64,000 nt of DNA, taken from IMG/VR virus record IMGVR_UViG_3300046092_000062, positions 186,001 to 250,000 of that record, one strand, 5' to 3'. Of the stretch, positions 4,053-26,431 are shown piece after piece. The notes under the pieces were generated by a model. That model was not told the DNA's origin and searched no databases. It saw nothing but the letters and a program-made list of their open reading frames with translations. Numbering within the stretch: the stretch's first letter is position 1; every line of letters starts with the position of its first letter. The position numbers and the translations under genes were made by a program.

Positions 4053-4409
4053 ATGAAATTCTTTCAAGAAACTACTGACTACAAAGACAAGATTTCAAAC
4101 GGCATCTACTTGCTGTCAGATGACAAGACACGTATGTTTGCCTATGTTGCACCAGGCAACAACACTGCAAAAGAATTCAAGCGCCCGATTCGCATCGACA
4201 CTCGTGGCCGCAGCTTCAAGCCTGTTACTAATACCTTCAACTATGTGATCCCTGCAGAAGTTGCCCCAGAAGTCCCGCAGTGGATTGTTAAAGGCAGCAA
4301 AGGCGATGAGTACATTGTGCGCAAAGACGGCTTGATGTATTCATGTACATGCAGCGGATTTAAATTTCGCGGTAGCTGCAAGCACGTCACGGAGATCAAA
4401 GGCGCATGA
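4053..4409 (+). CDS. SWIM-type zinc finger protein
   Basis: C-terminal YSCTCSGFKFRGSCKHV (CxC-xn-CxH). Confidence 0.75.
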   Translation: MKFFQETTDYKDKISNGIYLLSDDKTRMFAYVAPGNNTAKEFKRPIRIDTRGRSFKPVTNTFNYVIPAEVAPEVPQWIVKGSKGDEYIVRKDGLMYSCTCSGFKFRGSCKHVTEIKGA

Positions 4410-4615
4410 TTAAACGTCAGTATCATTACTATGGTGGCCGCAACGGCGATGCCTACTTCTGCAACTTTGTTGATGCAGCGGGCGGGCAAGAACACATTCG
4501 TACTGAACTAGCTAAGTGGAAAGCAACAGTTGCTAAAAGCAAAGCCAAATACACCTACAATGTCAAGTTCCACGACGAGCAGTTATACATGTTTTTTAGG
4601 ATCAAGTTTTCATGA
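4406..4615 (+). CDS. LRW-family mini-protein I-1
   Basis: tail FHDEQLYMFFRIKFS. Confidence 0.75.
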   Translation: MIKRQYHYYGGRNGDAYFCNFVDAAGGQEHIRTELAKWKATVAKSKAKYTYNVKFHDEQLYMFFRIKFS

Positions 4616-4863
4616 CAGAAGCGTGGATATTCGTTAATGGACAGAAGGTTCAGATTCCTCAGCATCCTTACCAAGCCAGGGAGTTTAGATGGCATTTGGG
4701 CGCAGAGTATAATTCTGCATTGGAGTGGGAAAATCCCGAGTTTGACAACATAAAAACTTGGTGCGAGCAAACTTGTGTTCCGCATACTTACAGAATGTTT
4801 TTGAGAAGTGTTTGGTTCTTTCGTGAGTCCGATGCCTTATTGTGCAAGTTGAGGTGGGTATGA
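4612..4863 (+). CDS. LRW-family mini-protein I-2
   Basis: WCEQ core; tail FFRESDALLCKLRWV. Confidence 0.85.
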   Translation: MTEAWIFVNGQKVQIPQHPYQAREFRWHLGAEYNSALEWENPEFDNIKTWCEQTCVPHTYRMFLRSVWFFRESDALLCKLRWV

Positions 4864-5090
4864 ACTGGCAGTTTTGGCGTAAGCAATATCGAGTGGCTGT
4901 GACAGAAAATGATTACAATGCTAAGATTGTAAAGCACATGGGCACTACTGGAAAACTCCATATGCAGTTTTTCGACTTTGTTAAGCAAGAGTTCAATGCT
5001 GATCGTGAGTGGAGTTGGAAGACCAGAGAGAATTTCCTAGTGTTTGATAATGAACATGACTACGCTATGTTTCTGTTAAGGATGCTGTGA
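4860..5090 (+). CDS. LRW-family mini-protein I-3
   Basis: start ATG 4860 (ATGA overlap); tail FDNEHDYAMFLLRML. Confidence 0.85.
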   Translation: MNWQFWRKQYRVAVTENDYNAKIVKHMGTTGKLHMQFFDFVKQEFNADREWSWKTRENFLVFDNEHDYAMFLLRML

Positions 5091-5341
5091 TGTTGATCGA
5101 ACTCGACGATGAATATCGTATGATTGGGTACTACATCGCCGTACTAGAAGATCCAATTGACAGCGGGCACGATTTGTGGTATCACGAATCATTCAAAGAC
5201 ACCGATGAATGGTGTGAGCAAACCTTTGGGGCGCAGGACATGTGGGGAGAAAATCCTGCTACAGGGTGGAAGCGTATGCGTAACAGATACTTCTTTACTA
5301 CAGATGCTGCCCGCGGGTTATTTGTATTGAGGTTTACATGA
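5087..5341 (+). CDS. LRW-family mini-protein I-4
   Basis: WCEQTFG core; tail FTTDAARGLFVLRFT. Confidence 0.85.
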   Translation: MMLIELDDEYRMIGYYIAVLEDPIDSGHDLWYHESFKDTDEWCEQTFGAQDMWGENPATGWKRMRNRYFFTTDAARGLFVLRFT

Positions 5342-5559
5342 TTGAAGTAGATATCGATAAAGAAGGCGGATATGGTCGTCACCACTGGTGGGAAAACTTT
5401 CGCGACTATGCTGAGGAACAGGGGTATAATTTCGATAATGCTGAGAATATCACCAAAGCACTTGCAGAATGGAACGCTATTGATAAGGACCCAGATTCCA
5501 CCAAGTTCTACTTTGAAAACGAGCAGGACCACTTGCTGTTTATGTTGAGGTTTACATGA
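5338..5559 (+). CDS. LRW-family mini-protein I-5
   Basis: tail FENEQDHLLFMLRFT. Confidence 0.85.
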   Translation: MIEVDIDKEGGYGRHHWWENFRDYAEEQGYNFDNAENITKALAEWNAIDKDPDSTKFYFENEQDHLLFMLRFT

Positions 5560-5840
5560 AAGTAAAAGACACACTGCAAATTGATTTGATCTACGGCACA
5601 CTCCGTCAACGCCTGCGGGAGTTTGTAGCAGAGACTCCTTGCTTGTATACAAATGACGGAGACGCTGTTAACCTTGTGTGTCATTATTTCCCCTGTTGGC
5701 AGTACAATGGTGCTGCACCGTTTGAAGAAGTTATGCTGTGGTGTGAAGAACATTTCGGCCGTGATTGGATTTGGAGATTTGAAACAATTTTCTTCAAGCA
5801 CGAACGTGATCGTGCAGTATTCTTATTGAGGTGGTCATGA
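5556..5840 (+). CDS. LRW-family mini-protein I-6
   Basis: WCEEHFG core; tail FKHERDRAVFLLRWS. Confidence 0.85.
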   Translation: MKVKDTLQIDLIYGTLRQRLREFVAETPCLYTNDGDAVNLVCHYFPCWQYNGAAPFEEVMLWCEEHFGRDWIWRFETIFFKHERDRAVFLLRWS

Positions 5841-6058
5841 CAACTCTTTACATCTCCGGGGATTACGACCAAAGCCCACTGGCATACAAAAACTTCTATC
5901 GAGCAGTGATAGAACCCAGGTTAATGGAAGTACACCGTGAATCAATTAGCGGAAGTGATCTCCTTAAAGAGTACAATGCACATTGGGATAATACATCTAA
6001 GAGCATTGTGTTTGACACTGAACACGATTTGACAATGTTTATGTTGAGGTGGGCATGA
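5837..6058 (+). CDS. LRW-family mini-protein I-7
   Basis: tail FDTEHDLTMFMLRWA. Confidence 0.85.
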   Translation: MTTLYISGDYDQSPLAYKNFYRAVIEPRLMEVHRESISGSDLLKEYNAHWDNTSKSIVFDTEHDLTMFMLRWA

Positions 6059-6306
6059 TTGTAAAAGAGTATTACCAAAACATTAACTGTAGCAAACCCA
6101 GGGACTACTTTGAGCGTTGGTATGCAGACGTGTGGGCACGACGAATCGGCACAAAGATCGCACAGCCCGGAGTGTTAGCTCGTGTACTCGAAGAAGAAAT
6201 TGCTCAAGTTGGTGCTTATCTCGAGGACAAAGATCGCGGGTACAAATTTGTAGCAACATTCAAAGACGAGCACGACTATACCATGTTTGTATTGAGGTGG
6301 TCATGA
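6055..6306 (+). CDS. LRW-family mini-protein I-8
   Basis: tail FKDEHDYTMFVLRWS. Confidence 0.85.
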   Translation: MIVKEYYQNINCSKPRDYFERWYADVWARRIGTKIAQPGVLARVLEEEIAQVGAYLEDKDRGYKFVATFKDEHDYTMFVLRWS

Positions 6307-6530
6307 AACTACGTGCCGACATTCGTCCATACTTTCAGAAGATTGCTGATTACTATTGGGACAACATTGGTCGTGACTTCTACAACGAAGGGCATCACAT
6401 AACCATTTGGGACTGGCTCAAGCGTGATTACTCTGTGGTTAAGATTGGGCAAATTGGCAGCAAGACTGAGTTATGGGTTACATTTCCAGATGAGCAGCAC
6501 ATGACTATGTTTATGTTGAGGTGGACATGA
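6303..6530 (+). CDS. LRW-family mini-protein I-9
   Basis: true start ATG 6303 (track ORF extended upstream); tail FPDEQHMTMFMLRWT. Confidence 0.85.
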   Translation: MKLRADIRPYFQKIADYYWDNIGRDFYNEGHHITIWDWLKRDYSVVKIGQIGSKTELWVTFPDEQHMTMFMLRWT

Positions 6531-6727
6531 AACAAGAGCTAACTATGCGCATGGATTGCGAATACACTTACATTCCATTTGCCAATAGCCGCACCAGCAT
6601 CGATTGGATAGAAGCACTACTTTGGTGCGAAGAGTTCGAAGGCATTGGACACTTTAGCATGGGAGGACATGGCATTTACTTCGAAAAGGAAAAAGATGCT
6701 ATAATGTTTACATTAATCAACTCATGA
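6527..6727 (+). CDS. LRW-family mini-protein I-10
   Basis: WCEE core; tail FEKEKDAIMFTLINS. Confidence 0.85.
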   Translation: MKQELTMRMDCEYTYIPFANSRTSIDWIEALLWCEEFEGIGHFSMGGHGIYFEKEKDAIMFTLINS

Positions 6728-7005
6728 AAAAGCAATATACAAGAGACTCCCTTATGAAAAAGGCACGTATTGAATCCGACCAGCTAAACACTATCTTCCA
6801 GAAGTGGGCGGCAAACAATGGGTATAAGACCTCAGGACATTGGATTGATCACCTTGATCGACTTAACCTGCGTTACGGCCCTGGCCAAGCGTTTGATCAT
6901 TATGTTTGGTCATGCGGTGGCCGCATTTACACAGAATACAGCAAGCGTTATGCAGACTTCTTTGAAGACGAAGATTTGATAATGTTTACATTAAGGCACC
7001 TATGA
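6724..7005 (+). CDS. LRW-family mini-protein I-11
   Basis: tail FEDEDLIMFTLRHL. Confidence 0.8.
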   Translation: MKKQYTRDSLMKKARIESDQLNTIFQKWAANNGYKTSGHWIDHLDRLNLRYGPGQAFDHYVWSCGGRIYTEYSKRYADFFEDEDLIMFTLRHL

Positions 7006-7187
7006 TAACAACTTTACGAGCATGGTCCAGAGTTAGTGTAAGAGACATTCAACCAGCAGTAGCATGGTGCAGTGAGAATCTTACCCACAATGATTGGGTG
7101 TGCAGTTCGATCCCAAACGACAACGAATTTAGCTTTCGATTCCGTAACGAAAAGATTGCTACAGAGTTTGCACTGAGATTTGCATGA
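7002..7187 (+). CDS. LRW-family mini-protein I-12
   Basis: WCSENL core; tail FRNEKIATEFALRFA. Confidence 0.85.
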   Translation: MITTLRAWSRVSVRDIQPAVAWCSENLTHNDWVCSSIPNDNEFSFRFRNEKIATEFALRFA

Positions 7188-7429
7188 TACGATTAGATCT
7201 TGTTAAAGACTATGCACCTATTCCGATATGGAACAAATTTGTTGGACACCTGCAAGAACAAGTGGGACCACAGGCAGTAACTGACGCTTATGTTAATACC
7301 GCACTAGCTGAGTACTGTGCAGTGTATTATATGGAAGAGGTGGGTAACATATATGAAAGTTCTGTGCTACACTGGATTGAGTTTGAAGATGAAGAATTGT
7401 ACTCTTGGTTTATGTTGAGGTGGGCATGA
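7184..7429 (+). CDS. LRW-family mini-protein I-13
   Basis: tail FEDEELYSWFMLRWA. Confidence 0.85.
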   Translation: MIRLDLVKDYAPIPIWNKFVGHLQEQVGPQAVTDAYVNTALAEYCAVYYMEEVGNIYESSVLHWIEFEDEELYSWFMLRWA

Positions 7430-7683
7430 TTAGCATATTGTTATCAGACAAGGGCAGTACTCCCGAACAAGCATGGTGGTGGAAGTTTTTACACGGCACG
7501 GATAAACGTAGCGGTCCGTCAACTACAGAAGACCGCATTGAAGCTATCAACTTGGAATTGCTAAATTGGTCAGCGCAGCTATGGCGACACGAGCAAACGG
7601 CTACGCGCCACAATGCCCGAAGCGCATACATTGATTTCTACGACGAACAAGCGTACACTTGGTTTGTGCCGAGGTGGTCATGA
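7426..7683 (+). CDS. LRW-family mini-protein I-14
   Basis: tail FYDEQAYTWFVPRWS (Pro at the conserved Leu). Confidence 0.85.
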   Translation: MISILLSDKGSTPEQAWWWKFLHGTDKRSGPSTTEDRIEAINLELLNWSAQLWRHEQTATRHNARSAYIDFYDEQAYTWFVPRWS

Positions 7684-7874
7684 TTGAAATTAAAATCAGC
7701 AAGAAACTTCGTAATGTATACGGGGAAAGTGGTACTCAGGTTGCTTGGAAATGGTGCTTAGATAACTTTGGCCCACCGGAACCAAACGGTAAGCGTTGGG
7801 CATGGGACACTATGCGCACATTTTGGTTTCATAAAGAAGAAGATGCTACACTGTTTGCACTGAGGTGGTTATGA
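7680..7874 (+). CDS. LRW-family mini-protein I-15
   Basis: WCLDNFGP core; tail FHKEEDATLFALRWL. Confidence 0.85.
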   Translation: MIEIKISKKLRNVYGESGTQVAWKWCLDNFGPPEPNGKRWAWDTMRTFWFHKEEDATLFALRWL

Positions 7875-8098
7875 CAACAATTTCAATGAGCCATAATGTT
7901 CTAACAAATGCAGGGTGGATCCGCATACCGCTTGACGCTGAAAAAGTTATGCAAGCTCGACGACATGAAAGTTATTTTGAATTTTTTGAAACTGCACACA
8001 TTCGCAACCGGTATGCAATCTTTAGTGTGCCCAATGGATACGATTTCTTTTTTCGAAATAAAAAAGATGCTACAGAGTTTGTGTTGAGGTGGGCATGA
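7871..8098 (+). CDS. LRW-family mini-protein I-16
   Basis: tail FRNKKDATEFVLRWA. Confidence 0.85.
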   Translation: MTTISMSHNVLTNAGWIRIPLDAEKVMQARRHESYFEFFETAHIRNRYAIFSVPNGYDFFFRNKKDATEFVLRWA

Positions 8099-8385
8099 CT
8101 AAAGAAGAATGGACGAAATGGAATCGCAAGATACAACTAAACAGCATCTACGGTTTAAATCTCTGTAAAGAAATAGTGGCACCAAGGGATCAAGCACTAA
8201 CAGCGATACAAAACGCATGGGCTCAATGGCACTGTGATATCAAACACAACGTAACAGACTTTGGGTTTAAAGACTGGTGCAAGCGTGAGCATGGGTTTGA
8301 ATACCAACAGAATAGTGACCGGAGTGTTGTCACTACTGTACTTGACGAGCAAAAGTATGCTTGGTTCTTACTAAAGTGGGCATGA
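8095..8385 (+). CDS. LRW-family mini-protein I-17 with N-terminal PolB motif-B-like fragment
   Basis: N-term NRKIQLNSIYG; tail VLDEQKYAWFLLKWA. Confidence 0.85.
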   Translation: MTKEEWTKWNRKIQLNSIYGLNLCKEIVAPRDQALTAIQNAWAQWHCDIKHNVTDFGFKDWCKREHGFEYQQNSDRSVVTTVLDEQKYAWFLLKWA

Positions 8386-8388
8386 AAG

Positions 8389-8598
8389 ATGCAAGTAGAG
8401 AAAATGTTCCATCACACTGTGCCTAGCTCTAATGTGTGCATACAAGCCAGTAAATGGTTGCTGGAAGAGCGTGGATACAAGTTCGTCATTGAAGCCGAAA
8501 CAGAAGGACGCGGCAACAGTTCTAGATACACTGGCAGATACACATTCAAGTTCTTGTGTGAGCAAGAGTATATGTGGTTTCTAATGAGGTGGGCATGA
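8389..8598 (+). CDS. LRW-family mini-protein I-18 (close paralogue of 23627)
   Basis: tail RYTGRYTFKFLCEQEYMWFLMRWA. Confidence 0.85.
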   Translation: MQVEKMFHHTVPSSNVCIQASKWLLEERGYKFVIEAETEGRGNSSRYTGRYTFKFLCEQEYMWFLMRWA

Positions 8599-8599
8599 C

Positions 8600-8779
8600 A
8601 TGTTAACATACCGTATGATTGACTGGGTCAACATTCAACAACGCATGATTGAAGGCGGACTCAGTGATATTCCCAATGGGCGATTTCATGACAGCTACCG
8701 TAAGGACGATTACTTGTACTTTATGGTTGAGTTCGACACACCCGAGGATGAAATGATGTTTTTATTGAGGTGGGCATGA
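8600..8779 (+). CDS. LRW-family mini-protein I-19 (59 aa, missing from ORF track)
   Basis: hand translation MLTYRMIDWVNIQQ...FDTPEDEMMFLLRWA. Confidence 0.8.
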   Translation: MLTYRMIDWVNIQQRMIEGGLSDIPNGRFHDSYRKDDYLYFMVEFDTPEDEMMFLLRWA

Positions 8780-9000
8780 ACTCAAAACAAAGACGACGTG
8801 ATCGCAGAGCATGGAAACACGACATTGTGTTTACACACGAACAAGTTTATGAACGTGGTTACAACGACATGTGGGACTGGTGTGTTACTGTTTTTAATAA
8901 CAGGGGCAACAAGTGGAGAGAGCCGTATGGTCCTCCGGGCGTTAGATGGCAGTTTACCAAGCCAGAATACGCTGTGATGTTTGCACTACGCTGGCAATAA
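8776..9000 (+). CDS. LRW-family mini-protein I-20
   Basis: DWCVTVF core; tail FTKPEYAVMFALRWQ. Confidence 0.85.
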   Translation: MNSKQRRRDRRAWKHDIVFTHEQVYERGYNDMWDWCVTVFNNRGNKWREPYGPPGVRWQFTKPEYAVMFALRWQ

Positions 9001-16948: not shown

Positions 16949-16973
16949 CACATAAAGGCATTTAGTGTATAAT
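16945..16973 (+). promoter_or_regulatory. consensus sigma70 promoter heading array II
   Basis: TTGACA-17-TATAAT. Confidence 0.85.
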
Positions 16974-16979
16974 AGTACT

Positions 16980-17162
16980 ATGAACTCTATCACAATCAAT
17001 GGTGCCGATAAGGCACTCGAAGCAGGCGGCTGGTGCAGAAAACAATTTGGTATTAAGGGATGGACAATAGACTTGAACAGTATGTTGGGCAACAATCCCA
17101 CGTATAGGTTTGATTTCTCTAGTCCCGCTGATGCTACACTATTTGCATTAAAATGGCGGTAA
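16980..17162 (+). CDS. LRW-family mini-protein II-1
   Basis: WCRKQFG; tail FSSPADATLFALKWR. Confidence 0.85.
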   Translation: MNSITINGADKALEAGGWCRKQFGIKGWTIDLNSMLGNNPTYRFDFSSPADATLFALKWR

Positions 17163-17410
17163 CTTTAGTCGTTCATGAATTTACACTAGGTGACGTAGAT
17201 GATCCCGAAATCTACGCAGCCGTGCCCTTGTATGAATGGCAATTGAGTGATGCCGGTAAATGGGTTATGGAAAATGCTATTGAAACTCCCCAGTGGGGCA
17301 GAATCAATGATCATCTCACGTACTCACTTCGTTACAGAGTAACTGCAAAGCTCAAAGATGAGGATGCAACCTTTTTCAAGTTAAAGTATGATCACACTAA
17401 CCGACGCTGA
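17153..17410 (+). CDS. LRW-family mini-protein II-2
   Basis: tail LKDEDATFFKLKY. Confidence 0.8.
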   Translation: MAVTLVVHEFTLGDVDDPEIYAAVPLYEWQLSDAGKWVMENAIETPQWGRINDHLTYSLRYRVTAKLKDEDATFFKLKYDHTNRR

Positions 17411-17615
17411 GTGGCGTAATATTAGAAATCAAATCAGAATTGAATACGCCGACAAGCCCAGTGTTTGGCTATTGCGCTCTGTAATGAAGCGTGAGTTAGG
17501 ATTTACTGACCGCCATCATCAAGTATACAGAGAACAAACAGGTTACATCACTACTGTCTACTTGGACTTCTTTAATGATGCAGCAGAAACAATGTTTAGA
17601 TTGAAGTACTTATAA
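17388..17615 (+). CDS. LRW-family mini-protein II-3
   Basis: tail FFNDAAETMFRLKYL. Confidence 0.8.
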   Translation: MITLTDAEWRNIRNQIRIEYADKPSVWLLRSVMKRELGFTDRHHQVYREQTGYITTVYLDFFNDAAETMFRLKYL

Positions 17616-17831
17616 TTGGAATTCATTGCACGTATACTGCCCAAGTTAATTGCTGGTGTCCTAAGCATTATGGATGCCAGTCGCTTGCGGGATAAAGTAT
17701 ACCAGCAACAACACGAGCATGAGTTGATGTGGACTGCACTAGATGATATCGCACGTATGCACCCAGATCATCCGTCAGGAAAAATGGCAAAGAAAACACT
17801 AGATGAAGTTACTACACGCTACGGTAGGTAG
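17616..17831 (+). CDS. hypothetical protein (non-LRW)
   Basis: 71-aa ORF abutting previous stop. Confidence 0.65.
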   Translation: MEFIARILPKLIAGVLSIMDASRLRDKVYQQQHEHELMWTALDDIARMHPDHPSGKMAKKTLDEVTTRYGR

Positions 17832-18219
17832 GTTTCAGGCATGGCGCCATGCACGTTACCTCAAAAAGAAGGGCTGGACCCAGCGCCAGTTTGACCTCAT
17901 CAACGATCCTGATTTTTGCGCACGTGGCAGCAGTATTCGTAAAGATGTCTATCGCGGCTATCCCTACTTAATCTCGTTTGACGACACAGTACCAATGGAA
18001 CGGCGATATGGTCAAGGATGGATCACCGTAGTTGATAATATGACAGCGTGGTGCGAAGCGAATGTTACAGGCAAATGGAGAGAAGATATCCTTGCAGTCG
18101 ACAAGAGTTGGGACGACGAATGGACGCAAGGGTGCATGGGCCTAAGCCACAACATTCTATTCTTTGCATTTAACAATGAGCAAGATGCAGTAATGTTTAG
18201 TCTATACTGGAGTGTGTAA
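17803..18219 (+). CDS. LRW-family protein II-4 with long N-terminal extension
   Basis: AWCEAN core; tail FNNEQDAVMFSLYWSV; start uncertain. Confidence 0.8.
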   Translation: MKLLHATVGRFQAWRHARYLKKKGWTQRQFDLINDPDFCARGSSIRKDVYRGYPYLISFDDTVPMERRYGQGWITVVDNMTAWCEANVTGKWREDILAVDKSWDDEWTQGCMGLSHNILFFAFNNEQDAVMFSLYWSV

Positions 18220-18437
18220 TGAACATCGAATTCAAACATCGCCCGGACCGATACTACGAGTGGGAAATGTACTACAGTCCACAGGGCCCCGAAATGGGCG
18301 AAGTATACGGTTGGTGCTGGGAAACATTCGGTCACCCAGGACTAGCATTAGGTAATGGAACTTGGGATAACCACGGCGGATGGATTAAGTTTCGCAGAGA
18401 AGAAGATATGACTATGTTTATGTTGAGGTGGAGCTAA
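18219..18437 (+). CDS. LRW-family mini-protein II-5
   Basis: WCWETFG; tail FRREEDMTMFMLRWS. Confidence 0.85.
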   Translation: MNIEFKHRPDRYYEWEMYYSPQGPEMGEVYGWCWETFGHPGLALGNGTWDNHGGWIKFRREEDMTMFMLRWS

Positions 18438-18703
18438 TGGAATTATTTTATGGTGGCGGCGGACGCAGTAACCCGGACTTTATACACAAGGTGCGGGTTA
18501 GCAAAAAACGTGCAGGTGATGTTAGTCCACTGATGAAGTGGTGCGACGATTACCCAACTGGTGATAAGGGCTACTTTAAACGCTACTACATCGATTGGCG
18601 TGGTGACACAAAGAGCTGGGATAGTGACTATGTTACATTCCAATTTGAATGGGAACAAGCTGCTATCATGTTTGCTCTAAGTTTTGCGGACAGCGTATGC
18701 TAA
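18437..18703 (+). CDS. LRW-family mini-protein II-6
   Basis: KWCDD; tail FEWEQAAIMFALSF. Confidence 0.8.
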   Translation: MELFYGGGGRSNPDFIHKVRVSKKRAGDVSPLMKWCDDYPTGDKGYFKRYYIDWRGDTKSWDSDYVTFQFEWEQAAIMFALSFADSVC

Positions 18704-18981
18704 CAACAGTAAGAATTTGGGTACTAGATCACAATGTTATCCCCGACCAATCCGATGTAGACTACTGCAAGAACAACGGCATACAACTAGACGCCCAGCA
18801 AGGTGAGCATCAGCGTATCGAAACTGGCAGCGGGCAGGTCTATCACTACCGCACCTCACCCGGGGTCATAAAGCTAACCACATTTGACGAGAAAAGCGAA
18901 TGTATGTTACAATTACGCTACGCAGGTAGAATCCATCTAATGCAACAAATTTACACCGAGTCTGTAACACATTCGTATTAA
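18697..18981 (+). CDS. divergent LRW-like protein II-7
   Basis: FDEKSECMLQLRY; similar to 2936. Confidence 0.65.
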   Translation: MLTTVRIWVLDHNVIPDQSDVDYCKNNGIQLDAQQGEHQRIETGSGQVYHYRTSPGVIKLTTFDEKSECMLQLRYAGRIHLMQQIYTESVTHSY

Positions 18982-19310
18982 TGAAAGTTCGTCTTAAAAA
19001 TGGCCGCATTGGAGAGCATCGCCTTAAGTGGGACAACAACCCAATGGGCATTGCGCCATTGCTAATAGGATCGGAGACTGTGGAATTGGATATCACTGAA
19101 CGAATTTACAACGGGCCCGACTGCTACCCGTGGCGCAAGACGTTTGCACTTTGGCCAGTTAAAACAATAGGTGGTAGCCGCATTTGGTTACGCACTGTTT
19201 ACAAACAACGATTCTGGGCAGTGTGGGGCAAAGGCTTTCACATGGAGCCCTGGGTTGAATATGCAACACTATTTGAGATTTTAAAACATGAACCTAAATC
19301 ATCTATCTGA
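18981..19310 (+). CDS. Trp-rich hypothetical protein (non-LRW)
   Basis: WRKTFALWPVKT.GG..IWL..VY. Confidence 0.75.
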   Translation: MKVRLKNGRIGEHRLKWDNNPMGIAPLLIGSETVELDITERIYNGPDCYPWRKTFALWPVKTIGGSRIWLRTVYKQRFWAVWGKGFHMEPWVEYATLFEILKHEPKSSI

Positions 19311-19764
19311 CGTAGAGCTGCTACGCTACTTGGATTTGACTAGCACTGATCCATTGGTTATTCGTTTGATCAACATGCTGTCTGCACCTAACGGTGGGCT
19401 TGTTGGTGATTTAGTGGAAGCAGGCATGGATCCTAACACATGGGTCTTTACAGACGATCACCAAGACTACTACCCCGGAGATTACATCACCCACTTGCAA
19501 AAGATGGTTGCCTACGCAGAAGATGACCGTGCGGTAGCCGAAATGGATTTAGCGGATGCTCGTGAAGAACTTGATAAGTTAAGTCGACGCACCGTTACAG
19601 AACTTCTAGTAGATGCGCAGCGGGCAATTGACTCTGCAAAATCCAATCACCTTTACGCAGTTAGAGAAGCTGAAAAAGCTCACGAAGTAATTGACAAGGT
19701 ACAAGCAGAGAATAGACATCTCAAAGAGCAATTGGGCATGTGGAATATTTTAGGGACAGAGTAA
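19288..19764 (+). CDS. coiled-coil hypothetical protein
   Basis: heptad-like C-terminal half. Confidence 0.75.
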   Translation: MNLNHLSDVELLRYLDLTSTDPLVIRLINMLSAPNGGLVGDLVEAGMDPNTWVFTDDHQDYYPGDYITHLQKMVAYAEDDRAVAEMDLADAREELDKLSRRTVTELLVDAQRAIDSAKSNHLYAVREAEKAHEVIDKVQAENRHLKEQLGMWNILGTE

Positions 19765-19765
19765 C

Positions 19766-20032
19766 ATGGACAACGTTATTCACAGCAACAAATATTTCCG
19801 ATTAACTAAATGGCGCCATCGCAAAAGCGACAAGGTGCATTATCGCGTTGAGATGACATACAGTTGGTTGAATCTGGACCAAGAAGCAGGGGAGAAAAGT
19901 TTTCCTGAGCAAGTTCGCGATGTAATCGACCCAACTCGTTGTCGTGCTGGGCAAGCTGGCAACCACTGGAAATACCGTAACTTAGAAGAAGCTACAAAAG
20001 CCTATACATTTTTAGTAATGAAATTCTCATGA
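19766..20032 (+). CDS. LRW-family mini-protein II-8 (divergent)
   Basis: tail YRNLEEATKAYTFLVMKFS. Confidence 0.7.
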   Translation: MDNVIHSNKYFRLTKWRHRKSDKVHYRVEMTYSWLNLDQEAGEKSFPEQVRDVIDPTRCRAGQAGNHWKYRNLEEATKAYTFLVMKFS

Positions 20033-20310
20033 GTTATAAACTTAAACTAGCACACAAGCATCACGATCAATTAGATCAAATTGAAGCATGGCTCAACGCT
20101 AACGTTGGCCCTGGTAGCAAACGACATGCAAACAACACCTGGCTCGGTGCCGAAGATTGGTACTGCTATGAAGAAGCACTAGTTCCGGGCAGCGAGGAAG
20201 AGGAAGAAGAGTATTACGACAACGATGACAATCTTGAAGATATTTCAGATTTGATCTTTGTATTCCGCCGCGAAAGCGATCTGTTAATGTTTAGTTTGAA
20301 ATGGGCATAG
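20029..20310 (+). CDS. LRW-family mini-protein II-9 with acidic insertion
   Basis: SEEEEEEYYDNDDNLED; tail FRRESDLLMFSLKWA; TAG stop. Confidence 0.85.
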   Translation: MSYKLKLAHKHHDQLDQIEAWLNANVGPGSKRHANNTWLGAEDWYCYEEALVPGSEEEEEEYYDNDDNLEDISDLIFVFRRESDLLMFSLKWA

Positions 20311-20311
20311 C

Positions 20312-20668
20312 ATGTCTAGTCCTTTTAAACTCACAGATCTCCCCAACAACACTTGGTCAGTAACATGGACCGAGAATAACTTTGCACATAATGCTAAACA
20401 GCGAGACAAGTTAGTAGATATTCTGTTTAGCGAAATTGGATGCCGCGACGTTGGCCTAGGCATTAAACTAAACAATGGCGAACTAGAAACACTGTGGATT
20501 GGTGAAAAAGAGTATTTTCAACGGTCCGACATAGCCCACGGATGGGAAGACATGTATGTTGTTCGTGGTGTTGTGTTCATTCACGAACACGAAGCTAGGG
20601 AGTTTCATCAATTGATGGAAAGTCGATTGGCTTGGTACTACTTAAAGCAAGGTGCAGCAGTTGCTTGA
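20312..20668 (+). CDS. divergent LRW-like protein II-10
   Basis: FIHEHEAREF followed by a helical extension. Confidence 0.65.
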   Translation: MSSPFKLTDLPNNTWSVTWTENNFAHNAKQRDKLVDILFSEIGCRDVGLGIKLNNGELETLWIGEKEYFQRSDIAHGWEDMYVVRGVVFIHEHEAREFHQLMESRLAWYYLKQGAAVA

Positions 20669-20879
20669 AATTCCATACCCAACCCTAATGAATGGCAGTC
20701 GCACGTTCTCTATGGAAACTCTACAAAAGTGGCTTGACGCACACTTTCCTCAAGAACGTTCCTGCATTGTCCGTGTTGCTATTGTTAACAAAGGGCCTGG
20801 GAGGTACGGCGACGAACGATGGGCGATTCGTTTTTATCGGGATGAAGATGCAACACTGTTTGGATTGTTATGGCAGTAA
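20652..20879 (+). CDS. LRW-family mini-protein II-11
   Basis: tail FYRDEDATLFGLLWQ; start GTG 20652 or ATG 20688. Confidence 0.8.
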   Translation: MQQLLEIPYPTLMNGSRTFSMETLQKWLDAHFPQERSCIVRVAIVNKGPGRYGDERWAIRFYRDEDATLFGLLWQ

Positions 20880-21127
20880 CCTATAAAACTAATCCGGGAT
20901 TCCCAGGTGTTAATTTTCCCGTGTTGCACCGTGTTGTCTATGCACACACCATCGATGGTGTCCCAGCACAATGGCAAATCAGCTACAAGGATTATATAGT
21001 CAATGAATGGCTTAAAGCAAACACACGCCATCCTTACTACCACAGTCCCGGGTATCTTCGTGAAAAGTTCATTGAGTTTGAATGTGATGAAGAAGCAGTG
21101 CTATTCGCACTAAAGTGGGCAAAGTAA
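20870..21127 (+). CDS. LRW-family mini-protein II-12
   Basis: tail FECDEEAVLFALKWAK. Confidence 0.85.
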   Translation: MAVTYKTNPGFPGVNFPVLHRVVYAHTIDGVPAQWQISYKDYIVNEWLKANTRHPYYHSPGYLREKFIEFECDEEAVLFALKWAK

Positions 21128-21357
21128 TGTACAGCAAGACTCACCGATTTTTTAAATTCAAACACGTTCCCAAGGACTTTATATGGGGCAGTGAGGAAAT
21201 TGACCTGTGCCGCCTGCACATTGGTGACAACCGTATCACGATGCCGCTTGTGGACCGCGAATGGTTTAGTTCGCCCGATGGTGTATGGATTCGACATGAT
21301 TGTCTGGATAACGAAATCATAACTTGGTTTGCACTGAAAGCAAGCAATGAAGTTTGA
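21127..21357 (+). CDS. LRW-family mini-protein II-13
   Basis: tail LDNEIITWFALKA. Confidence 0.75.
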   Translation: MYSKTHRFFKFKHVPKDFIWGSEEIDLCRLHIGDNRITMPLVDREWFSSPDGVWIRHDCLDNEIITWFALKASNEV

Positions 21358-21607
21358 ACTGCTAGAAGGGCGCATACACGGAGCCCGTTACTACACAGTT
21401 AGACCAGACTTTAATTGGTGGCTTTCGGGCAGCTTAAACAATACAAATGCCACCTGGCGTGATATGTTAGAATGGTGTGTAGAAGTATTCGGTCCTAGCG
21501 CAGAAATGGGTGTGTGGGAACCCGGTGCTCGTTGGTATGCTAACAATGCAAAGTTTTGGTTTCGTAATGCAGAAGATAGGACAGCGTTTTTGCTGAGATG
21601 GTCATGA
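21347..21607 (+). CDS. LRW-family mini-protein II-14
   Basis: EWCVEVFGP; tail FRNAEDRTAFLLRWS. Confidence 0.85.
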   Translation: MKFELLEGRIHGARYYTVRPDFNWWLSGSLNNTNATWRDMLEWCVEVFGPSAEMGVWEPGARWYANNAKFWFRNAEDRTAFLLRWS

Positions 21608-21837
21608 AACCAGACCTAGTCCAATTTTACTGCGAACGAGATCCCTATTACGCTAAATCACGTGAGTACTACATGATGAACGTAAATCATTACGAAACTC
21701 CTTATTACCTTTGGATGATACAGGAATATCGCACTGTGCTGTTAAACAAACAGGGTAGCTGGAGCGACAGGGCTGAACAGCATTGGGGCTTTATTAATGA
21801 ATCGGATAGAACAATTTTTATGTTGAGATGGTCATGA
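21604..21837 (+). CDS. LRW-family mini-protein II-15
   Basis: tail FINESDRTIFMLRWS. Confidence 0.85.
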   Translation: MKPDLVQFYCERDPYYAKSREYYMMNVNHYETPYYLWMIQEYRTVLLNKQGSWSDRAEQHWGFINESDRTIFMLRWS

Positions 21838-22064
21838 CAACTACTGTTGAATTTGGTAAAGATCGTTATCACTTACAGGGTGAAATGGAAGAATGGTGCG
21901 AGCACAATATTGGGTCTAATCCTCGTTATAGCAACCACGTTTGGTCCAAGCCAGTTGAGTGGGAAGGGTTAGGCACATGGTGCATGGCTAGTGCGTTTGG
22001 CACAACATTTTTCTACTTTAAACATCGCAAAGATGCAACCTTCTTTGCATTGAAATGGAAATAA
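21834..22064 (+). CDS. LRW-family mini-protein II-16
   Basis: EWCEHNIG; tail FKHRKDATFFALKWK. Confidence 0.85.
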   Translation: MTTTVEFGKDRYHLQGEMEEWCEHNIGSNPRYSNHVWSKPVEWEGLGTWCMASAFGTTFFYFKHRKDATFFALKWK

Positions 22065-22065
22065 T

Positions 22066-22428
22066 ATGGATGATCGGAATCTTTGGCACCTGCTATGTGA
22101 TTGGGTAAAATTTGGTAAGTTTATAGAATGGAAAGAATGGTTTTACTGGACCATTGTGCCTGGCACTAGCATTGGGGTCATTTGGCCAAATGGCCCAATT
22201 TCTCTGGGTTGTGATCCTGATGGCGAAGAGGTAATCGTCGACTCCGCTGATCCAAACGATCACTATCGCCCATGGTTAGAAGAGCATGTCGGGCGTCAGG
22301 GCATTGATTGGGAATGGAGAATGGGAACTTTTGGATTTTGGACAGATGAAATAGATACTCTAGACATTAAGTTTCGAGTGGGAAAGACAAAGTATGCTAC
22401 AATAGCAGCATTGATGTGGGGCCAATGA
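22066..22428 (+). CDS. LRW-family protein II-17, extended N-terminus
   Basis: WLEEHVG core; tail KYATIAALMWGQ. Confidence 0.75.
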   Translation: MDDRNLWHLLCDWVKFGKFIEWKEWFYWTIVPGTSIGVIWPNGPISLGCDPDGEEVIVDSADPNDHYRPWLEEHVGRQGIDWEWRMGTFGFWTDEIDTLDIKFRVGKTKYATIAALMWGQ

Positions 22429-22628
22429 GAACCAAAACTACAAGAGAACTATATCCGTACCATGTGCGCTTTAAGCGTACAGGAGATTGGTATGGCAATG
22501 ATGGTACTTGGTATCAAATTAGCACATGGCTTCGAGAACACTTTGGGCAGAATTGGGAATATCTTGACAGTATGTTTATGTTCTCTAAGGAAGAACACAA
22601 AATGCTTTTTATAATGAGATGGCTATGA
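22425..22628 (+). CDS. LRW-family mini-protein II-18
   Basis: WLREHFG; tail FSKEEHKMLFIMRWL. Confidence 0.85.
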   Translation: MRTKTTRELYPYHVRFKRTGDWYGNDGTWYQISTWLREHFGQNWEYLDSMFMFSKEEHKMLFIMRWL

Positions 22629-23044
22629 CAAAACGCAACACCGTAGTAATGGATATCGAAACCACAACAGCAGTAATGCCGCGTGGGTCTTCTTCTGTTT
22701 TTCAGGGCATCACAGGTGGAATACATCCTGGAGAAATGATGATTTATGCCGGGGGCAGACAAACTGGCAAGTCCACACTGTCTTACCATATATTAAAGAG
22801 CAGATACTACGAAATGGGCATCAAGGAACAAATCCAGACGTTGGATACGTTTACACTAGATGGTGCTACATGGTACACTGTACACTGTCGTCCTTCGACT
22901 ATTAGTGGGTGGGTGCAAGAGCAAGACTCCGATATGTGGTGCCGACACTACAACACAGGCGCACTGCGAGTTGAATACCCCACGTTTAACAACTACAACA
23001 TACACGAAGAACTGTATTCAATGTTATTGTTGAAATGGTCATGA
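22625..23044 (+). CDS. LRW-family protein II-19 with DnaB-like Walker A fragment
   Basis: GGIHPGEMMIYAGGRQTGKST; tail IHEELYSMLLLKWS. Confidence 0.8.
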   Translation: MTKRNTVVMDIETTTAVMPRGSSSVFQGITGGIHPGEMMIYAGGRQTGKSTLSYHILKSRYYEMGIKEQIQTLDTFTLDGATWYTVHCRPSTISGWVQEQDSDMWCRHYNTGALRVEYPTFNNYNIHEELYSMLLLKWS

Positions 23045-23406
23045 AAATCTTAAAACAAACTGTAGCAGCTAAGACTTGCACCCTCAAAGCCAATTGGACT
23101 ATTGATCGCTCAGCAGACAATAGCTTTACGATCGGTGATGATACGTGGCAAGAGGTTGGGGCAGCACTACGAAAAGAGATTGATGAAGAAATTGTTAACA
23201 ATATTAGAAGGCATGAGCTTATGTTAAAAGGATGGGTCAAGGCCCCGTTTACTAGCGACAAGTTTGCTACACCAGGCAACCACCAGATAGCAGAAGTTAC
23301 TGCATGGATTCACATGAACACCACGGCGCAATATCAAATCTTCGGCCGAGAGTTCTGGTTCTCAAGCAAGGAAGACTTAACACTGTTTGTACTGAGGTGG
23401 GCATGA
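23041..23406 (+). CDS. LRW-family protein II-20 with major-capsid (gp23-like) fragment
   Basis: ILKQTVAAKT..LKANWT...AAL.KEIDEEIV; tail FSSKEDLTLFVLRWA. Confidence 0.8.
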   Translation: MKILKQTVAAKTCTLKANWTIDRSADNSFTIGDDTWQEVGAALRKEIDEEIVNNIRRHELMLKGWVKAPFTSDKFATPGNHQIAEVTAWIHMNTTAQYQIFGREFWFSSKEDLTLFVLRWA

Positions 23407-23630
23407 GCTATACACTGTACCCCGACGAAGACATTCTAAAGAAGCAACGATATATCGTTAAGTACAGAGGGAGCCTGTATGGGCACCGCGACGAGATGCT
23501 TGCCTGGTGTGTAGAACAGTTTGGTCCACATTCACATGCCTACAAAAATCCACGATGGAGTGAAAACTGGGACCGATTCTGCTTTAAGAATGAAAGCGAC
23601 ATGATGCTGTTTATGTTGAGATGGTCATGA
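23403..23630 (+). CDS. LRW-family mini-protein II-21
   Basis: WCVEQFGP; tail FKNESDMMLFMLRWS. Confidence 0.85.
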   Translation: MSYTLYPDEDILKKQRYIVKYRGSLYGHRDEMLAWCVEQFGPHSHAYKNPRWSENWDRFCFKNESDMMLFMLRWS

Positions 23631-23893
23631 CAGATACAGATAAATTAGAGTGGTCAGATATTTGCCGCCATGAGCATAAGTGCAAGGGTGATGAATTGTT
23701 ATATCACACTGTGCCTAGCTATAGTGTATATGTCAGGGCATCTAAATGGTTGCGGGAAGAGCGTGGGTACAAGTTTATCAGCGTAGAGGGTGAAACGGAA
23801 GAACATAGTGCTGGTTGGCGTTACACGGGTAGGTATACTTTTAAGTTCTTGTGCGAGCAAGAGTATATGTGGTTTAAGTTGAGGTGGTCGTGA
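23627..23893 (+). CDS. LRW-family mini-protein II-22 (close paralogue of 8389)
   Basis: tail RYTGRYTFKFLCEQEYMWFKLRWS. Confidence 0.85.
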   Translation: MTDTDKLEWSDICRHEHKCKGDELLYHTVPSYSVYVRASKWLREERGYKFISVEGETEEHSAGWRYTGRYTFKFLCEQEYMWFKLRWS

Positions 23894-24180
23894 TGAGTAG
23901 ACCAGGTTTTAATTCACAAGAGTGGTTTCGGGCCAAGCATGACCCAAAACATGATATGGTACATGGCGATAGACTGTATTACGTTGAGCCAGGTTGCGAA
24001 TACGGGTTCAAAGAAGATGACGGATATGTGTGGAATCGCATAAGCTGTAGCTATTGGTTCGGGGACTGGATTGAAGAAAATGGCGGTGAGGGACGTTGGC
24101 GAGCATACGGCGGCAGGCATCGTGCTATCTACATTGTGCGCGAAGACCTACTAGCGTTTATTAAGTTAAAGTGGCTATGA
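23893..24180 (+). CDS. LRW-family mini-protein II-23
   Basis: DWIEENG; tail VREDLLAFIKLKWL. Confidence 0.8.
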   Translation: MSRPGFNSQEWFRAKHDPKHDMVHGDRLYYVEPGCEYGFKEDDGYVWNRISCSYWFGDWIEENGGEGRWRAYGGRHRAIYIVREDLLAFIKLKWL

Positions 24181-24377
24181 AATACTGGAACAAAGACAAA
24201 CGTGTTCGGCAAAACCATTGGTATACAATTACTTCGCCTACATGGTGGTCGTATGCTGATACTAAACTAGAGTTGCAGAGATTTGACAGTCCGGGTAAGT
24301 TTTATCTATATTACGGCAGTAGAACAATTTGGTTTGAGCGTGAACAAGACGCAGTATTTTTTAGATTGAAGATGTGA
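24177..24377 (+). CDS. LRW-family mini-protein II-24
   Basis: tail FEREQDAVFFRLKM. Confidence 0.8.
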   Translation: MKYWNKDKRVRQNHWYTITSPTWWSYADTKLELQRFDSPGKFYLYYGSRTIWFEREQDAVFFRLKM

Positions 24378-24378
24378 T

Positions 24379-24570
24379 ATGAAGCAATATGGCCTAGCGA
24401 TTGAACGTTGGGGGCATCCACGTAAGGCAACTATATGGCATTGGCTTAAACAAAACTTTGGCCCCGAGGGTGATCGTTGGGGCACACAGTATGACTACGG
24501 ACTGGACAATCTCTGGATGAATGAAGATGTTTACATCATGTATAAATTAAAATGGGAACAACATGACTGA
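24379..24570 (+). CDS. LRW-family mini-protein II-25
   Basis: WLKQNFGP; tail MNEDVYIMYKLKW. Confidence 0.8.
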   Translation: MKQYGLAIERWGHPRKATIWHWLKQNFGPEGDRWGTQYDYGLDNLWMNEDVYIMYKLKWEQHD

Positions 24571-24961
24571 TAAGAATACCTCAGATCAAATGAAAATCTT
24601 GATCCCAATGATCCGTAAGGTCATGCCCACAATGATCGCAACTGACATCATTGGTGTGCAGACAATGGATATGGGAATCGAACTTGAAACCGGGGAGACT
24701 TACGTGGATGAAGCCGCTAGTCATGCAACCGAAAACAACATCGTGGAATGGTATTGGGCACGATTGCCCCTGTCTGCAGGAGCATTCTGGAACATCAAAG
24801 GAACCCAGGCGCATTACAAACAAGTTGATGCATGGTGTGAAGAAACATTCGGACCACGCTGCTCCAACGAGCATCCTGAATTTATATGGGATAAAATTAA
24901 CTACCGTTATTGCTTTAAACATTCCGAAGATAGGACAGCATTCGTGCTGAAGTGGGGCTAA
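24563..24961 (+). CDS. LRW-family protein II-26 with major-capsid Gol-region fragment
   Basis: ILIPMIRKVMPTMIATDIIGVQTM; WCEETFGP; tail FKHSEDRTAFVLKWG. Confidence 0.85.
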   Translation: MTDKNTSDQMKILIPMIRKVMPTMIATDIIGVQTMDMGIELETGETYVDEAASHATENNIVEWYWARLPLSAGAFWNIKGTQAHYKQVDAWCEETFGPRCSNEHPEFIWDKINYRYCFKHSEDRTAFVLKWG

Positions 24962-24998
24962 TATTTCACGCTACGTACTGCCAACACAGTCCGAGCAA

Positions 24999-25175
24999 AT
25001 GGACGCATGGTTCAATGGCGGGCACTTAATTGTGCTAACAGACATTATGTATTGGAGCGCTCACTACCAAGACTTAGCAGACTGGTGTAAAGGAAACGAT
25101 TCCCAAGTGCAAGGAATGACAGTGGTAGTACCCAATGAAAAAGTATTAACTTTATTCTGCCTACGCTGGTCGTAA
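24999..25175 (+). CDS. LRW-family mini-protein II-27 (58 aa, missing from track)
   Basis: hand translation MDAWFNGG...ADWCKG...VPNEKVLTLFCLRWS. Confidence 0.75.
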   Translation: MDAWFNGGHLIVLTDIMYWSAHYQDLADWCKGNDSQVQGMTVVVPNEKVLTLFCLRWS

Positions 25176-25185
25176 TAAGTACAGT

Positions 25186-26394: not shown

Positions 26395-26397
26395 TAG

Positions 26398-26426: not shown

Positions 26427-26431
26427 ACAGT

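What the first reader, a model, noticed from the sequence alone, without database searches (positions are those of the whole stretch)
8382..8606. Footprint of a recent cassette move: I-18 has out-of-register junctions on both sides and a near-twin in array II
Seen: 8389-8598 and 23627-23893 share HTVPS..V...ASKWL.EERGYKF and RYTGRYTFKFLCEQEYMWF, with long DNA identity (AAGTTCTTGTG.GAGCAAGAGTATATGTGGTTT). Unlike most other array I junctions, the ATGA at 8382 opens only a 14-codon ORF (true start 8389), and the ATGA at 8595 opens a 3-codon ORF (true start 8600). Inference: this cassette was recently copied or inserted and its junctions are not yet optimised, which is direct evidence of traffic between arrays.
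Basis: partly seen in the sequence, partly recalled or inferred. Interest (0 to 1): 0.68.

Follow-up and report, generated by a model that had tools for sequence, protein, structure and literature searches.

The report
Inserted, truncated gene cassette in phage array
In a 320-kb T4-like freshwater phage, one small gene (I-18) was slotted exactly between two neighbours that are adjacent in every related phage, but it is a truncated, old and divergent relative of the array II gene rather than a fresh copy of it, and its odd junctions do not come from a lack of time to optimise them.

Summary
I-18 (8389-8598) is the only array I gene besides I-19 that does not start in the ATGA stop/start overlap. 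Its best paralogue is II-25 (23627-23893).

- **I-18 is a derived insertion.** Six related records join I-17 directly to I-19. G000 is nested among them in the flanking genes.
- **The insert is one cassette unit.** It spans 213 nt (8386-8598). It is flanked by a 39-nt imperfect direct repeat that ends in a perfect 10-nt GTGGGCATGA.
- **The 3' offset is ancestral.** The ATGA-C-ATG at 8595-8602 is I-19's own start and is identical in all relatives that lack I-18.
- **The 5' offset comes from truncation.** I-18 alone lacks about 20 N-terminal residues (net 47 nt, a frameshift). The other homologues recovered are 88-92 aa and start in register.
- **II-25 is no near-twin.** Identity is 64% aa and 72-74% nt, with pS 0.67 (dS about 1.7). 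I-18 is equally far from homologues in other phages. The long identical DNA block is shared family-wide.

The donor was therefore probably an unsampled phage allele, not resident II-25. Cassette shuffling is general here and normally regenerates in-register junctions. It resembles PeSL-mediated modular shuffling, except that the repeat is a coding, Shine-Dalgarno-bearing gene end.

The parts
8095..8385 (+). I-17, the upstream neighbour. Its last 42 nt, including GCATGA, are identical in relative L006.
8347..8385 (+). Left copy of the 39-nt junction repeat (3' coding motif of I-17). The last 10 nt, GTGGGCATGA (8376-8385), are perfect.
   Evidence: sequence
8386..8598 (+). The 213-nt segment present in G000 and absent from six related records. 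It is one stop-to-stop cassette unit containing I-18.
8382..8426 (+). 14-codon ORF opened by I-17's terminal ATGA. Its first 15 nt after ATGA match the first codons of full-length homologues at 7-9 of 15 positions. It may be a vestige of the original in-register start.
8389..8598 (+). I-18 ORF, 69 aa (64 aa if started at ATG 8404). It keeps the whole predicted beta-alpha-beta-beta-alpha core and all 22 invariant residues. It lacks the N-terminal Cys/His arm.
8560..8598 (+). Right copy of the junction repeat (3' coding motif of I-18). It matches the left copy at 30 of 39 positions, and its last 10 nt (8589-8598) are perfect.
8595..8606 (+). 3-codon ORF ATG ACA TGT TAA. The same letters follow I-17 directly in all relatives, so this is the ancestral I-17/I-19 junction.
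8600..8779 (+). I-19, the downstream neighbour. Its start, 2 nt after the preceding stop, is conserved. It is 86-97% aa identical in relatives.
23627..23893 (+). II-25, the resident full-length (88 aa) family member with an in-register ATGA start. It has orthologues in G001/G002 (72% by tblastn; 77%), L003, L004/5, L016 and L030/31.
4406..9000 (+). Array I: 20 translationally coupled small genes that share the C-terminal F.F..E.D...F.LRW[AS] motif.
16965..27200 (+). Array II: about 33 small genes, most with the same C-terminal motif and with more varied junctions.

Best explanation
The window lies in a T4-superfamily jumbo phage. Its two arrays are hyperplastic runs of small genes. Each gene ends in a conserved motif, typically TTG AGG TGG GCA/TCA TGA. 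That motif is at once the protein's C-terminus, the Shine-Dalgarno sequence, and the ATGA start/stop overlap for the next gene. Because every gene ends alike, recombination between these ends adds, removes or swaps whole stop-to-stop units, and the junctions normally come out in register. I-18 is one such unit. It was inserted exactly at the old I-17/I-19 junction, leaving a duplicated junction repeat on each side. It belongs to the mobile II-25 cassette family, but it came from a divergent allele, most likely in another co-infecting phage, not from the resident II-25. It is the only member missing the N-terminal arm. That net 47-nt loss shifts the frame, so I-17's ATGA now opens a dead 14-codon ORF. 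The remaining core is read from ATG 8389 or 8404, presumably by re-initiation after the I-17 stop. The offset downstream is simply I-19's native start, which I-18 inherited as its neighbour. Shown: the insertion, its exact limits and repeats, the ancestral I-19 offset, the truncation, the divergence, and the general shuffling. Inferred: recombination at the motif as the mechanism, the outside donor, the order of insertion and truncation, and that I-18 is translated.
For: Absence and polarity: I-17 joins I-19 with the same letters in L006/L007, L029, L032 and L030/L031. Complete genomes G002 and G003 hold one II-25 homologue each and no second copy. G000 is nested in the flanks. For I-19, nt identity is 94.9% to L029, 90.4% to L006 and 84.7% to L030. 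For I-17, L030 is the outgroup at about 65%. Limits: the spacing is 213 nt between the two copies of a 39-nt repeat that ends in a perfect 10 nt. Truncation: the nine database homologues are 88-91 aa. The six read from loci are 88-92 aa and start at an in-register ATGA. There is a net 47-nt gap. Not from resident II-25: pS 0.67, dS about 1.7, dN 0.22. Nt identity to I-18 is 149/207 for II-25, 150/207 for L004 and 149/207 for L016. I-18 has a 0.47 terminal branch with no supported sister. General shuffling: I-2, I-4 and I-14 are absent from L006. L006, L029 and L030 carry extra cassettes. All of these have -4 junctions. II-25 homologues sit in at least 5 different neighbour contexts. Dual-use motif: AGG makes up 14 of 20 Arg codons at the motif against 6% genome-wide. 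Real DNA: independent contigs bridge both junctions.
Against: Only one lineage carries I-18 and no donor allele closer than 65% aa was found. The source and date are therefore inferred. I-16 and I-17 of G000 are themselves divergent from L029 (77-80% nt, against 92-97% for I-9 to I-15 and I-19). I-18 may thus have arrived inside a larger recombinant tract, and its junction with I-17 may have formed in another phage. The vestigial-start reading rests on 15 nt. The anchored match is 7-9 of 15 (binomial p 0.10 to 0.009). An unanchored local alignment is not significant (p 0.30) and offers a rival register at the R-C-E/K codons. No mini-circle or skip joint was seen in the contigs. No expression data were obtained.
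Confidence: 0.75

Rival explanations
1. One reading: I-18 was recently copied within this genome from II-25 in array II, and both junctions are out of register because selection has not yet tidied them.
For: I-18/II-25 is the closest paralogue pair in the genome. I-18 is missing from relatives.
Against: pS is 0.67 between the two, as large as between II-25 homologues of different phages. I-18 is no closer to II-25 than to L004 or L016 homologues, and the tree gives no supported sister grouping (bootstrap 19). The 3' offset exists without I-18 in all relatives. Other gained cassettes are in register.
Confidence: 0.05
2. I-18 is ancestral at this position and was deleted in the relatives by recombination between the two junction repeats.
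For: The 39-nt direct repeat would support deletion as readily as insertion. PeSL-type shuffling is described as reversible (PMC2839356).
Against: It needs the same deletion in at least three lineages that bracket G000 in the flank comparisons (L029, L006, L030), or horizontal spread of the deleted allele. All other genomes carry a single family copy, in array II-like surroundings.
Confidence: 0.1
3. I-18 came in as part of a larger recombinant tract (I-16 to I-18, 7871-8598) exchanged with an unsampled phage. The I-17/I-18 junction would then be older than G000's split from L029 and was made elsewhere. This variant is compatible with the best explanation.
For: I-16 (77% nt) and I-17 (80% nt) are far more diverged from L029 than I-9 to I-15 (92-97%) and I-19 (95%). 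The divergent tract ends exactly at I-18's 3' end.
Against: I-12 and I-20 are also divergent singly. The mosaic may therefore be cassette by cassette rather than one tract. L006 and L029 also differ from each other by about 21% in I-17.
Confidence: 0.3
4. I-18 is a dead remnant (pseudogene) that is no longer translated.
For: It has lost the conserved N-terminal arm and its in-register start. It has no good Shine-Dalgarno sequence: the I-17 end has AAG where most family genes have AGG. It carries substitutions at four columns conserved in at least 90% of homologues: Y32S, Y35C, I51V and L85M. It has a long terminal branch.
Against: The 69-codon frame is open. All 22 family-invariant residues and the whole predicted core fold are kept. 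dN/dS to homologues is 0.13-0.46. ATG 8389 lies 3 nt after the I-17 stop, similar to I-19's conserved offset start. The sequence is identical in several samples.
Confidence: 0.3
5. Assembly chimera between the two arrays.
For: Repeated motifs can mislead assemblers.
Against: Contigs from three other runs span both junctions with no differences.
Confidence: 0.01

Closest known systems
PeSL-mediated modular shuffling in hyperplastic regions of T4-type phages (Arbiol et al. 2010, PMC2839356; Comeau et al. 2014, PMC4122927)
   Same: The genome is of the T4 superfamily (Gp23). Small ORFan genes in hyperplastic regions differ between close relatives by whole-gene insertion, deletion or replacement. 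The indel is flanked by direct repeats of a conserved regulatory motif. The process is reversible in principle through a one-gene circle.
   Different: Here the repeat is not an intergenic promoter plus stem-loop of about 100 bp. It is the 3' end of the coding sequence itself (about 40 nt), which also carries the Shine-Dalgarno sequence and the ATGA overlap. There is no intergenic space. Cassettes bring no promoter or terminator and rely on translational coupling within one operon. PeSL-like promoter cassettes do exist here, but at the borders of array I.
Integron gene cassettes
   Same: Both are arrays of promoterless single-gene units, read from one upstream promoter, that vary by whole cassettes between relatives.
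   Different: No tyrosine integrase is present in the 92%-complete genome. There is no attC-like inverted repeat at the junction. The repeat is coding and direct.
Tandem or dispersed paralogue duplication within a phage genome
   Same: There are two homologous copies in one genome.
   Different: Synonymous divergence is saturated, and I-18 has no closer kinship to the resident copy than to other phages' copies.
Translational coupling by overlapping stop/start (ATGA, TGATG), a general bacterial and phage operon feature (established knowledge)
   Same: 16 of 19 array I junctions are ATGA. The motif codons spell a GAGGTGG Shine-Dalgarno sequence.
   Different: I-18 and I-19 start 3 nt and 1 nt after the stop. 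For these two, coupling would have to work by downstream re-initiation.

Membership tests
PeSL-type modular shuffling (T4-type hyperplastic regions) | Genome belongs to the T4 superfamily | tested here: met
   Gp23 PF07068 scores 327 bits at G000:2757-3704.
PeSL-type modular shuffling (T4-type hyperplastic regions) | Whole-ORFan presence/absence between close relatives | tested here: met
   I-18, I-2, I-4 and I-14 are present in G000 and absent in L006. Extra cassettes occur in L006, L029 and L030.
PeSL-type modular shuffling (T4-type hyperplastic regions) | Indel flanked by direct copies of a conserved motif | tested here: met
   A 39-nt repeat (30 of 39 identical, last 10 perfect) lies at spacing 213.
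PeSL-type modular shuffling (T4-type hyperplastic regions) | The motif is an intergenic sigma-70-like promoter plus a stem-loop terminator | tested here: not met
   There is no intergenic space at 8385/8386 or 8598/8599. No strong promoter (more than 9 of 12 matches) lies there, and the one terminator-like stem at 8346-8363 is within chance expectation (5 found, 4.7 expected). No inverted repeat was found. The repeat is coding sequence.
PeSL-type modular shuffling (T4-type hyperplastic regions) | Circular one-cassette intermediates | not testable with these tools
   Only contigs were available, and no back-joint was reported.
Integron | IntI-type tyrosine recombinase | tested here: not met
   PF00589 has no match in G000, while the control genomes all match.
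Integron | attC imperfect inverted repeats at cassette ends | tested here: not met
   There are 0 inverted repeats in 8300-8700.
Recent intragenomic duplication | Low synonymous divergence between the two copies, which are sisters in a tree | tested here: not met
   pS 0.67. Sister grouping has bootstrap 19.
II-25 cassette family (unnamed; no Pfam or PHROG) | Conserved core HTVP...W L..ER.YK...YTGRYTFKFLCEQEY.WF.LRW | tested here: met
   I-18 keeps all 22 invariant columns. Its E-value to II-25 is 8e-32.
II-25 cassette family (unnamed; no Pfam or PHROG) | N-terminal arm MTDTVKLEW.DICRHE..CE and an in-register ATGA start | tested here: not met
   The arm is absent from I-18 only.

The most novel reading that the evidence does not exclude
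The conserved gene end (C-terminal helix codons, Shine-Dalgarno sequence and ATGA) may be a translated recombination site. It would let T4-like jumbo phages exchange promoterless genes between positions, arrays and genomes as plug-and-play, translationally coupled units without any dedicated recombinase. This would be a coding-sequence counterpart of PeSLs. I-18 would then be a caught example. The family's shared C-terminus may be kept as much by this DNA/RNA role as by protein function.
Probability: 0.4. Interest if true: 0.65.

Novelty: new variant of a known kind. Interest (0 to 1): 0.45.

Why it matters
This case gives a base-precise example of how hyperplastic regions of large T4-like phages gain genes. 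It also shows that a junction which looks badly fitted need not date an event. One offset here is an old, conserved start. The other is damage inside the cassette. If the coding junction motif is indeed the exchange site, two things follow. It explains how dozens of unrelated small proteins come to share one C-terminus. It also offers a simple rule, stop-to-stop units, for tracing accessory-gene flow among uncultivated freshwater phages.

Tried and rejected
- **GenBank phages.** Megablast of 7000-12000 against GenBank phages gave no match.
- **Family scans.** Pfam and PHROGs scans of eight array proteins gave nothing above the cut-offs.
- **Structure searches.** A profile of the II-25 family against PDB sequences gave 0 hits. 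Foldseek of the AF2 model (pLDDT 74) gave no hit at E of 0.001 or below against PDB or BFVD. Only weak ferredoxin-like look-alikes (CutA1, ACT, papillomavirus E2 DNA-binding domain) and uncharacterised phage proteins appeared. The Atlas search returned only 'hypothetical protein' viral clusters. No protein function is claimed.
- **Synonymous conservation in the 3' block.** I tested whether the 3' block shows special synonymous conservation that would point to gene conversion between I-18 and II-25. Codon identity there is about the same as at other invariant residues, and it is shared by all homologues. Rejected.
- **Vestigial-start test.** The anchored identity is suggestive (7-9 of 15). The free local alignment is not significant (p 0.30) and suggests another possible register. 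Left open.
- **Tree.** The maximum-likelihood tree of 16 homologues over 66 columns is unresolved, with most bootstraps below 50. It is used only to show the lack of support for an I-18 plus II-25 clade.
- **Strain-level polymorphism.** Logan contigs showed no joint skipping 8386-8598. Contigs drop rare variants, so this is not evidence that such strains are absent.
- **Not done or not applicable.** No alternative genetic code was used.

Full report
**Setting.** The window is bases 186001-250000 of a 320,767-bp IMG/VR virus record that is 92% complete. The record encodes a T4-type major capsid protein, Gp23, at 327 bits. It also encodes NAMPT and an ATP-dependent DNA ligase. It has no close relative among GenBank phages. 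Sequencing runs that hold it are almost all labelled freshwater metagenomes.

Two runs of small + strand genes share a C-terminal motif, F.F..E.D...F.LRW[AS]. Array I has 20 genes at 4406-9000. Array II has about 33 genes at 16965-27200. An HMM of the motif finds convincing members (E below 0.001) only in these two stretches of the genome. Pfam and PHROGs do not know the family.

- I-17 ends ...GTGGGCATGA at 8376-8385.
- The ATG inside that ATGA reads 14 codons to a TAG at 8424-8426.
- The 69-codon I-18 frame starts at ATG 8389, and the next in-frame ATG is at 8404.
- I-18 also ends ...GTGGGCATGA, at 8589-8598.
- That second ATG reads 3 codons to a TAA at 8604-8606, and I-19 starts at 8600.
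- In array I, 16 of 19 junctions are ATGA overlaps and one is TGATG. Only I-18 and I-19 are offset (with two starts corrected).
- I-18 and II-25 align at 43 of 67 residues (64%, E 8e-32). DNA identity is 74% over 197 nt, including a 33-nt block with one mismatch.
- They are the best pair in the family by a wide margin. The next pair reaches 44% over 48 aa.
- Contigs from three other runs cross both junctions without a single difference, so the arrangement is real DNA.

**Related genomes decide the main question.** Searches with the ligase, I-17 and I-19 recovered relatives at several distances:
- L006/L007 (records G001 and G002; ligase 98% aa)
- L029 and L032 (ERZ contigs)
- L030/L031 (JACC contigs)

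In every one of them I-17 is followed directly by I-19. The letters across the joint are the same as in the window once 8386-8598 is removed...AAAGTGGGCATGA, then CATGTTAAC....

Two conclusions follow. First, the ATGA-C-ATG offset in front of I-19 is an old and stable property of the I-17/I-19 joint. It is not a scar of the I-18 event. In L031 the stop context is even GCATAA, so the ATG there is dispensable. Second, I-18 is a presence/absence difference of exactly one stop-to-stop unit of 213 nt. It is flanked by a 39-nt direct repeat (30 of 39 identical) whose last 10 nt are perfect.

**Polarity.**
- In I-19, G000 is closest to L029 (94.9% nt), then L006 (90.4%), then L030 (84.7%).
- In I-17, L030 is the outgroup at about 65%, while G000, L006 and L029 are about 80% from each other.
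- G000 is therefore nested among genomes that lack I-18. A single gain is far more parsimonious than three identical losses.
- The complete genomes G002 and G003 have one II-25 homologue each and no second copy. G004 has none.

One caveat applies. G000's I-16 and I-17 are much more diverged from L029 (77-80% nt) than I-9 to I-15 and I-19 (92-97%). I-18 may therefore have arrived within a larger exchanged tract. 'Recent' can only be said relative to the shared I-17/I-19 joint.

**The source was not the resident II-25.**
- Between I-18 and II-25, pS is 0.67 (dS about 1.7) and dN is 0.22. This is the same range as between II-25 homologues of different phages.
- I-18 matches II-25 at 149 of 207 nt, L004 at 150 of 207 and L016 at 149 of 207.
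- Its 5' part (E-K-M-F-H-H) follows the L004/L016 type, not II-25's.
L022 and L016/L030 also carry amino-acid changes within it. It marks the family, not a recent copy.
- A maximum-likelihood tree gives I-18 a long terminal branch (0.47) and no supported sister.
- Among 5.8 billion proteins the closest homologue is 65% identical.
- Flanking genes differ from L029 by only about 5%. Post-insertion change therefore cannot explain the synonymous distance, and an unsampled divergent donor is the best reading.

**Why the 5' junction is out of register.** The nine database homologues are 88-91 aa. The six read from loci are 88-92 aa and begin MTD[TA]VKLEW.DIC.H...C at an in-register ATGA. I-18 alone lacks these 20 or so residues.

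At DNA level there is a net gap of 47 nt, which is not a multiple of three. It lies between I-17's ATGA and the block AAAATGTTCCATCAC. I-18 shares that block with the L004, L016 and L030 homologues.

The 15 nt after the ATGA match the homologues' first codons at 7-9 positions in fixed register (binomial p from 0.10 to 0.009). This suggests a vestigial original start followed by an internal frameshifting deletion. A free local alignment is not significant (p 0.30) and offers another register. Capture of an already 5'-truncated copy therefore remains possible. Either way, the offset comes from damage to this cassette, not from an immature junction.

**What is left of I-18.** An AF2 model of II-25 (pLDDT 74) has a poorly predicted N-terminal arm and a beta-alpha-beta-beta-alpha core at residues 25-87. 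I-18 keeps that whole core and all 22 invariant columns. It has changes at four columns conserved in at least 90% of homologues (Y32S, Y35C, I51V, L85M). dN/dS to homologues is 0.13-0.46. Whether it is still made is open. ATG 8389 lies 3 nt after the I-17 stop, a situation like I-19's conserved start. No fold or sequence search gave a function.

**Cassette traffic is general and normally leaves clean junctions.**
- Against L006, G000 has extra I-2, I-4, I-14 and I-18.
- L006, L029 and L030 have cassettes that G000 lacks.
- In L030/L031 the order is I-19, x, I-20, II-24, II-25, x, II-26, so 'array I' and 'array II' genes share one array.
- All these joints are -4 overlaps.
- II-25 homologues have different neighbours in G000, G001, L003, L004, L016 and L030, always with an in-register start.
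- The motif's Arg is AGG in 14 of 20 cases against 6% genome-wide. The usual end TTGAGGTGG[GT]CATGA spells a Shine-Dalgarno sequence plus the overlap.

Exchange within this shared end automatically rebuilds a working junction.

**Comparison with known systems.** The closest precedent is PeSL-mediated modular shuffling in T4-type hyperplastic regions. There, ORFans are gained and lost by recombination between conserved motifs of about 100 bp, possibly through mini-circles (PMC2839356; PMC4122927). The genome type, the kind of genes, the whole-gene indels and the flanking direct repeats all match.

The nature of the repeat does not match. Here it is coding and translational, not an intergenic promoter plus terminator. 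PeSL-like promoter cassettes do occur here, but at the two borders of array I. It is not an integron either. There is no tyrosine recombinase and no attC-like inverted repeat.

**Verdict.** This is a real, neatly delimited cassette insertion in a shuffling gene array. It is of moderate interest as a new variant of a known kind of phage genome plasticity.

Noticed in passing
window 23041-23403 (II-23) and 24563-24958 (II-29): Two array II cassettes carry pieces of the phage's own major capsid protein, fused to the family's C-terminal module. II-23 residues 1-56 are 43% identical to Gp23 residues 159-218. II-29 residues 11-35 are 56% identical to Gp23 residues 67-91. The Pfam Gp23 match is 27.2 bits for II-29. 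An Atlas neighbour cluster also has Gp23 in 13% of its members.
   Followed up: partly
window 3976-4027 and 9010-9061; also about 40953, 41192, 44362, 57448: Array I is bracketed by two copies of a conserved early-type promoter cassette: a T-run, then TTGACCCA.AATG, a 17-nt spacer region and TATAATA (11 of 12 matches to sigma-70 consensus). The pattern gives 7 matches in the window against 0.05 expected. The 9008-9071 bin has several-fold higher contig depth than its flanks (about 10-fold in X2 and X3), with many loose ends, as expected for a widely repeated PeSL-like element.
   Followed up: partly
L030 and L031, 1-6100: In these metagenome contigs, genes of G000's array I (I-11, I-15, I-17, I-19, I-20) and array II (II-8, II-9, II-24, II-25, II-26, II-28, II-29) lie in one continuous array.
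   Followed up: yes
window arrays I and II, last 15 nt of each gene: The C-terminal LRW[AS] codons spell a Shine-Dalgarno sequence. AGG is used for 14 of 20 Arg at this position against 6% genome-wide. The last sense codon is GCA or TCA in 15 of 29 genes, which creates the ATGA.
   Followed up: yes
window 23627-23700 (II-25 residues 1-24) and homologues: A conserved N-terminal arm carries C13, H15 and C19, with H27 invariant just after it. It may be a small metal-binding arm. The AF2 model predicts it poorly. I-18 has lost it.
   Followed up: no
protein P0002 (ENA contig of 1223 nt): Its C-terminal half is identical to G000's II-25, while its N-terminal 30 or so residues differ at many positions. 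This suggests recombination inside the cassette as well as at its ends.
   Followed up: no
L031 about 2990-3000: The I-17 stop context is GCATAA instead of GCATGA. The unused ATG at the I-17/I-19 joint can therefore be lost.
   Followed up: yes
window 26412-26434; L030 554-571: Some cassette starts lie only 5 nt after a TATAAT-like box (...TATAATACAGTATG). This would imply leaderless or near-leaderless transcripts.
   Followed up: no
L022 (G001) 1166-2466: In the nearest relative, II-24 is missing: II-23 joins II-25 directly. Three extra cassettes lie between II-25 and II-26. The II-25 neighbourhood is therefore as plastic as that of I-18.
   Followed up: partly
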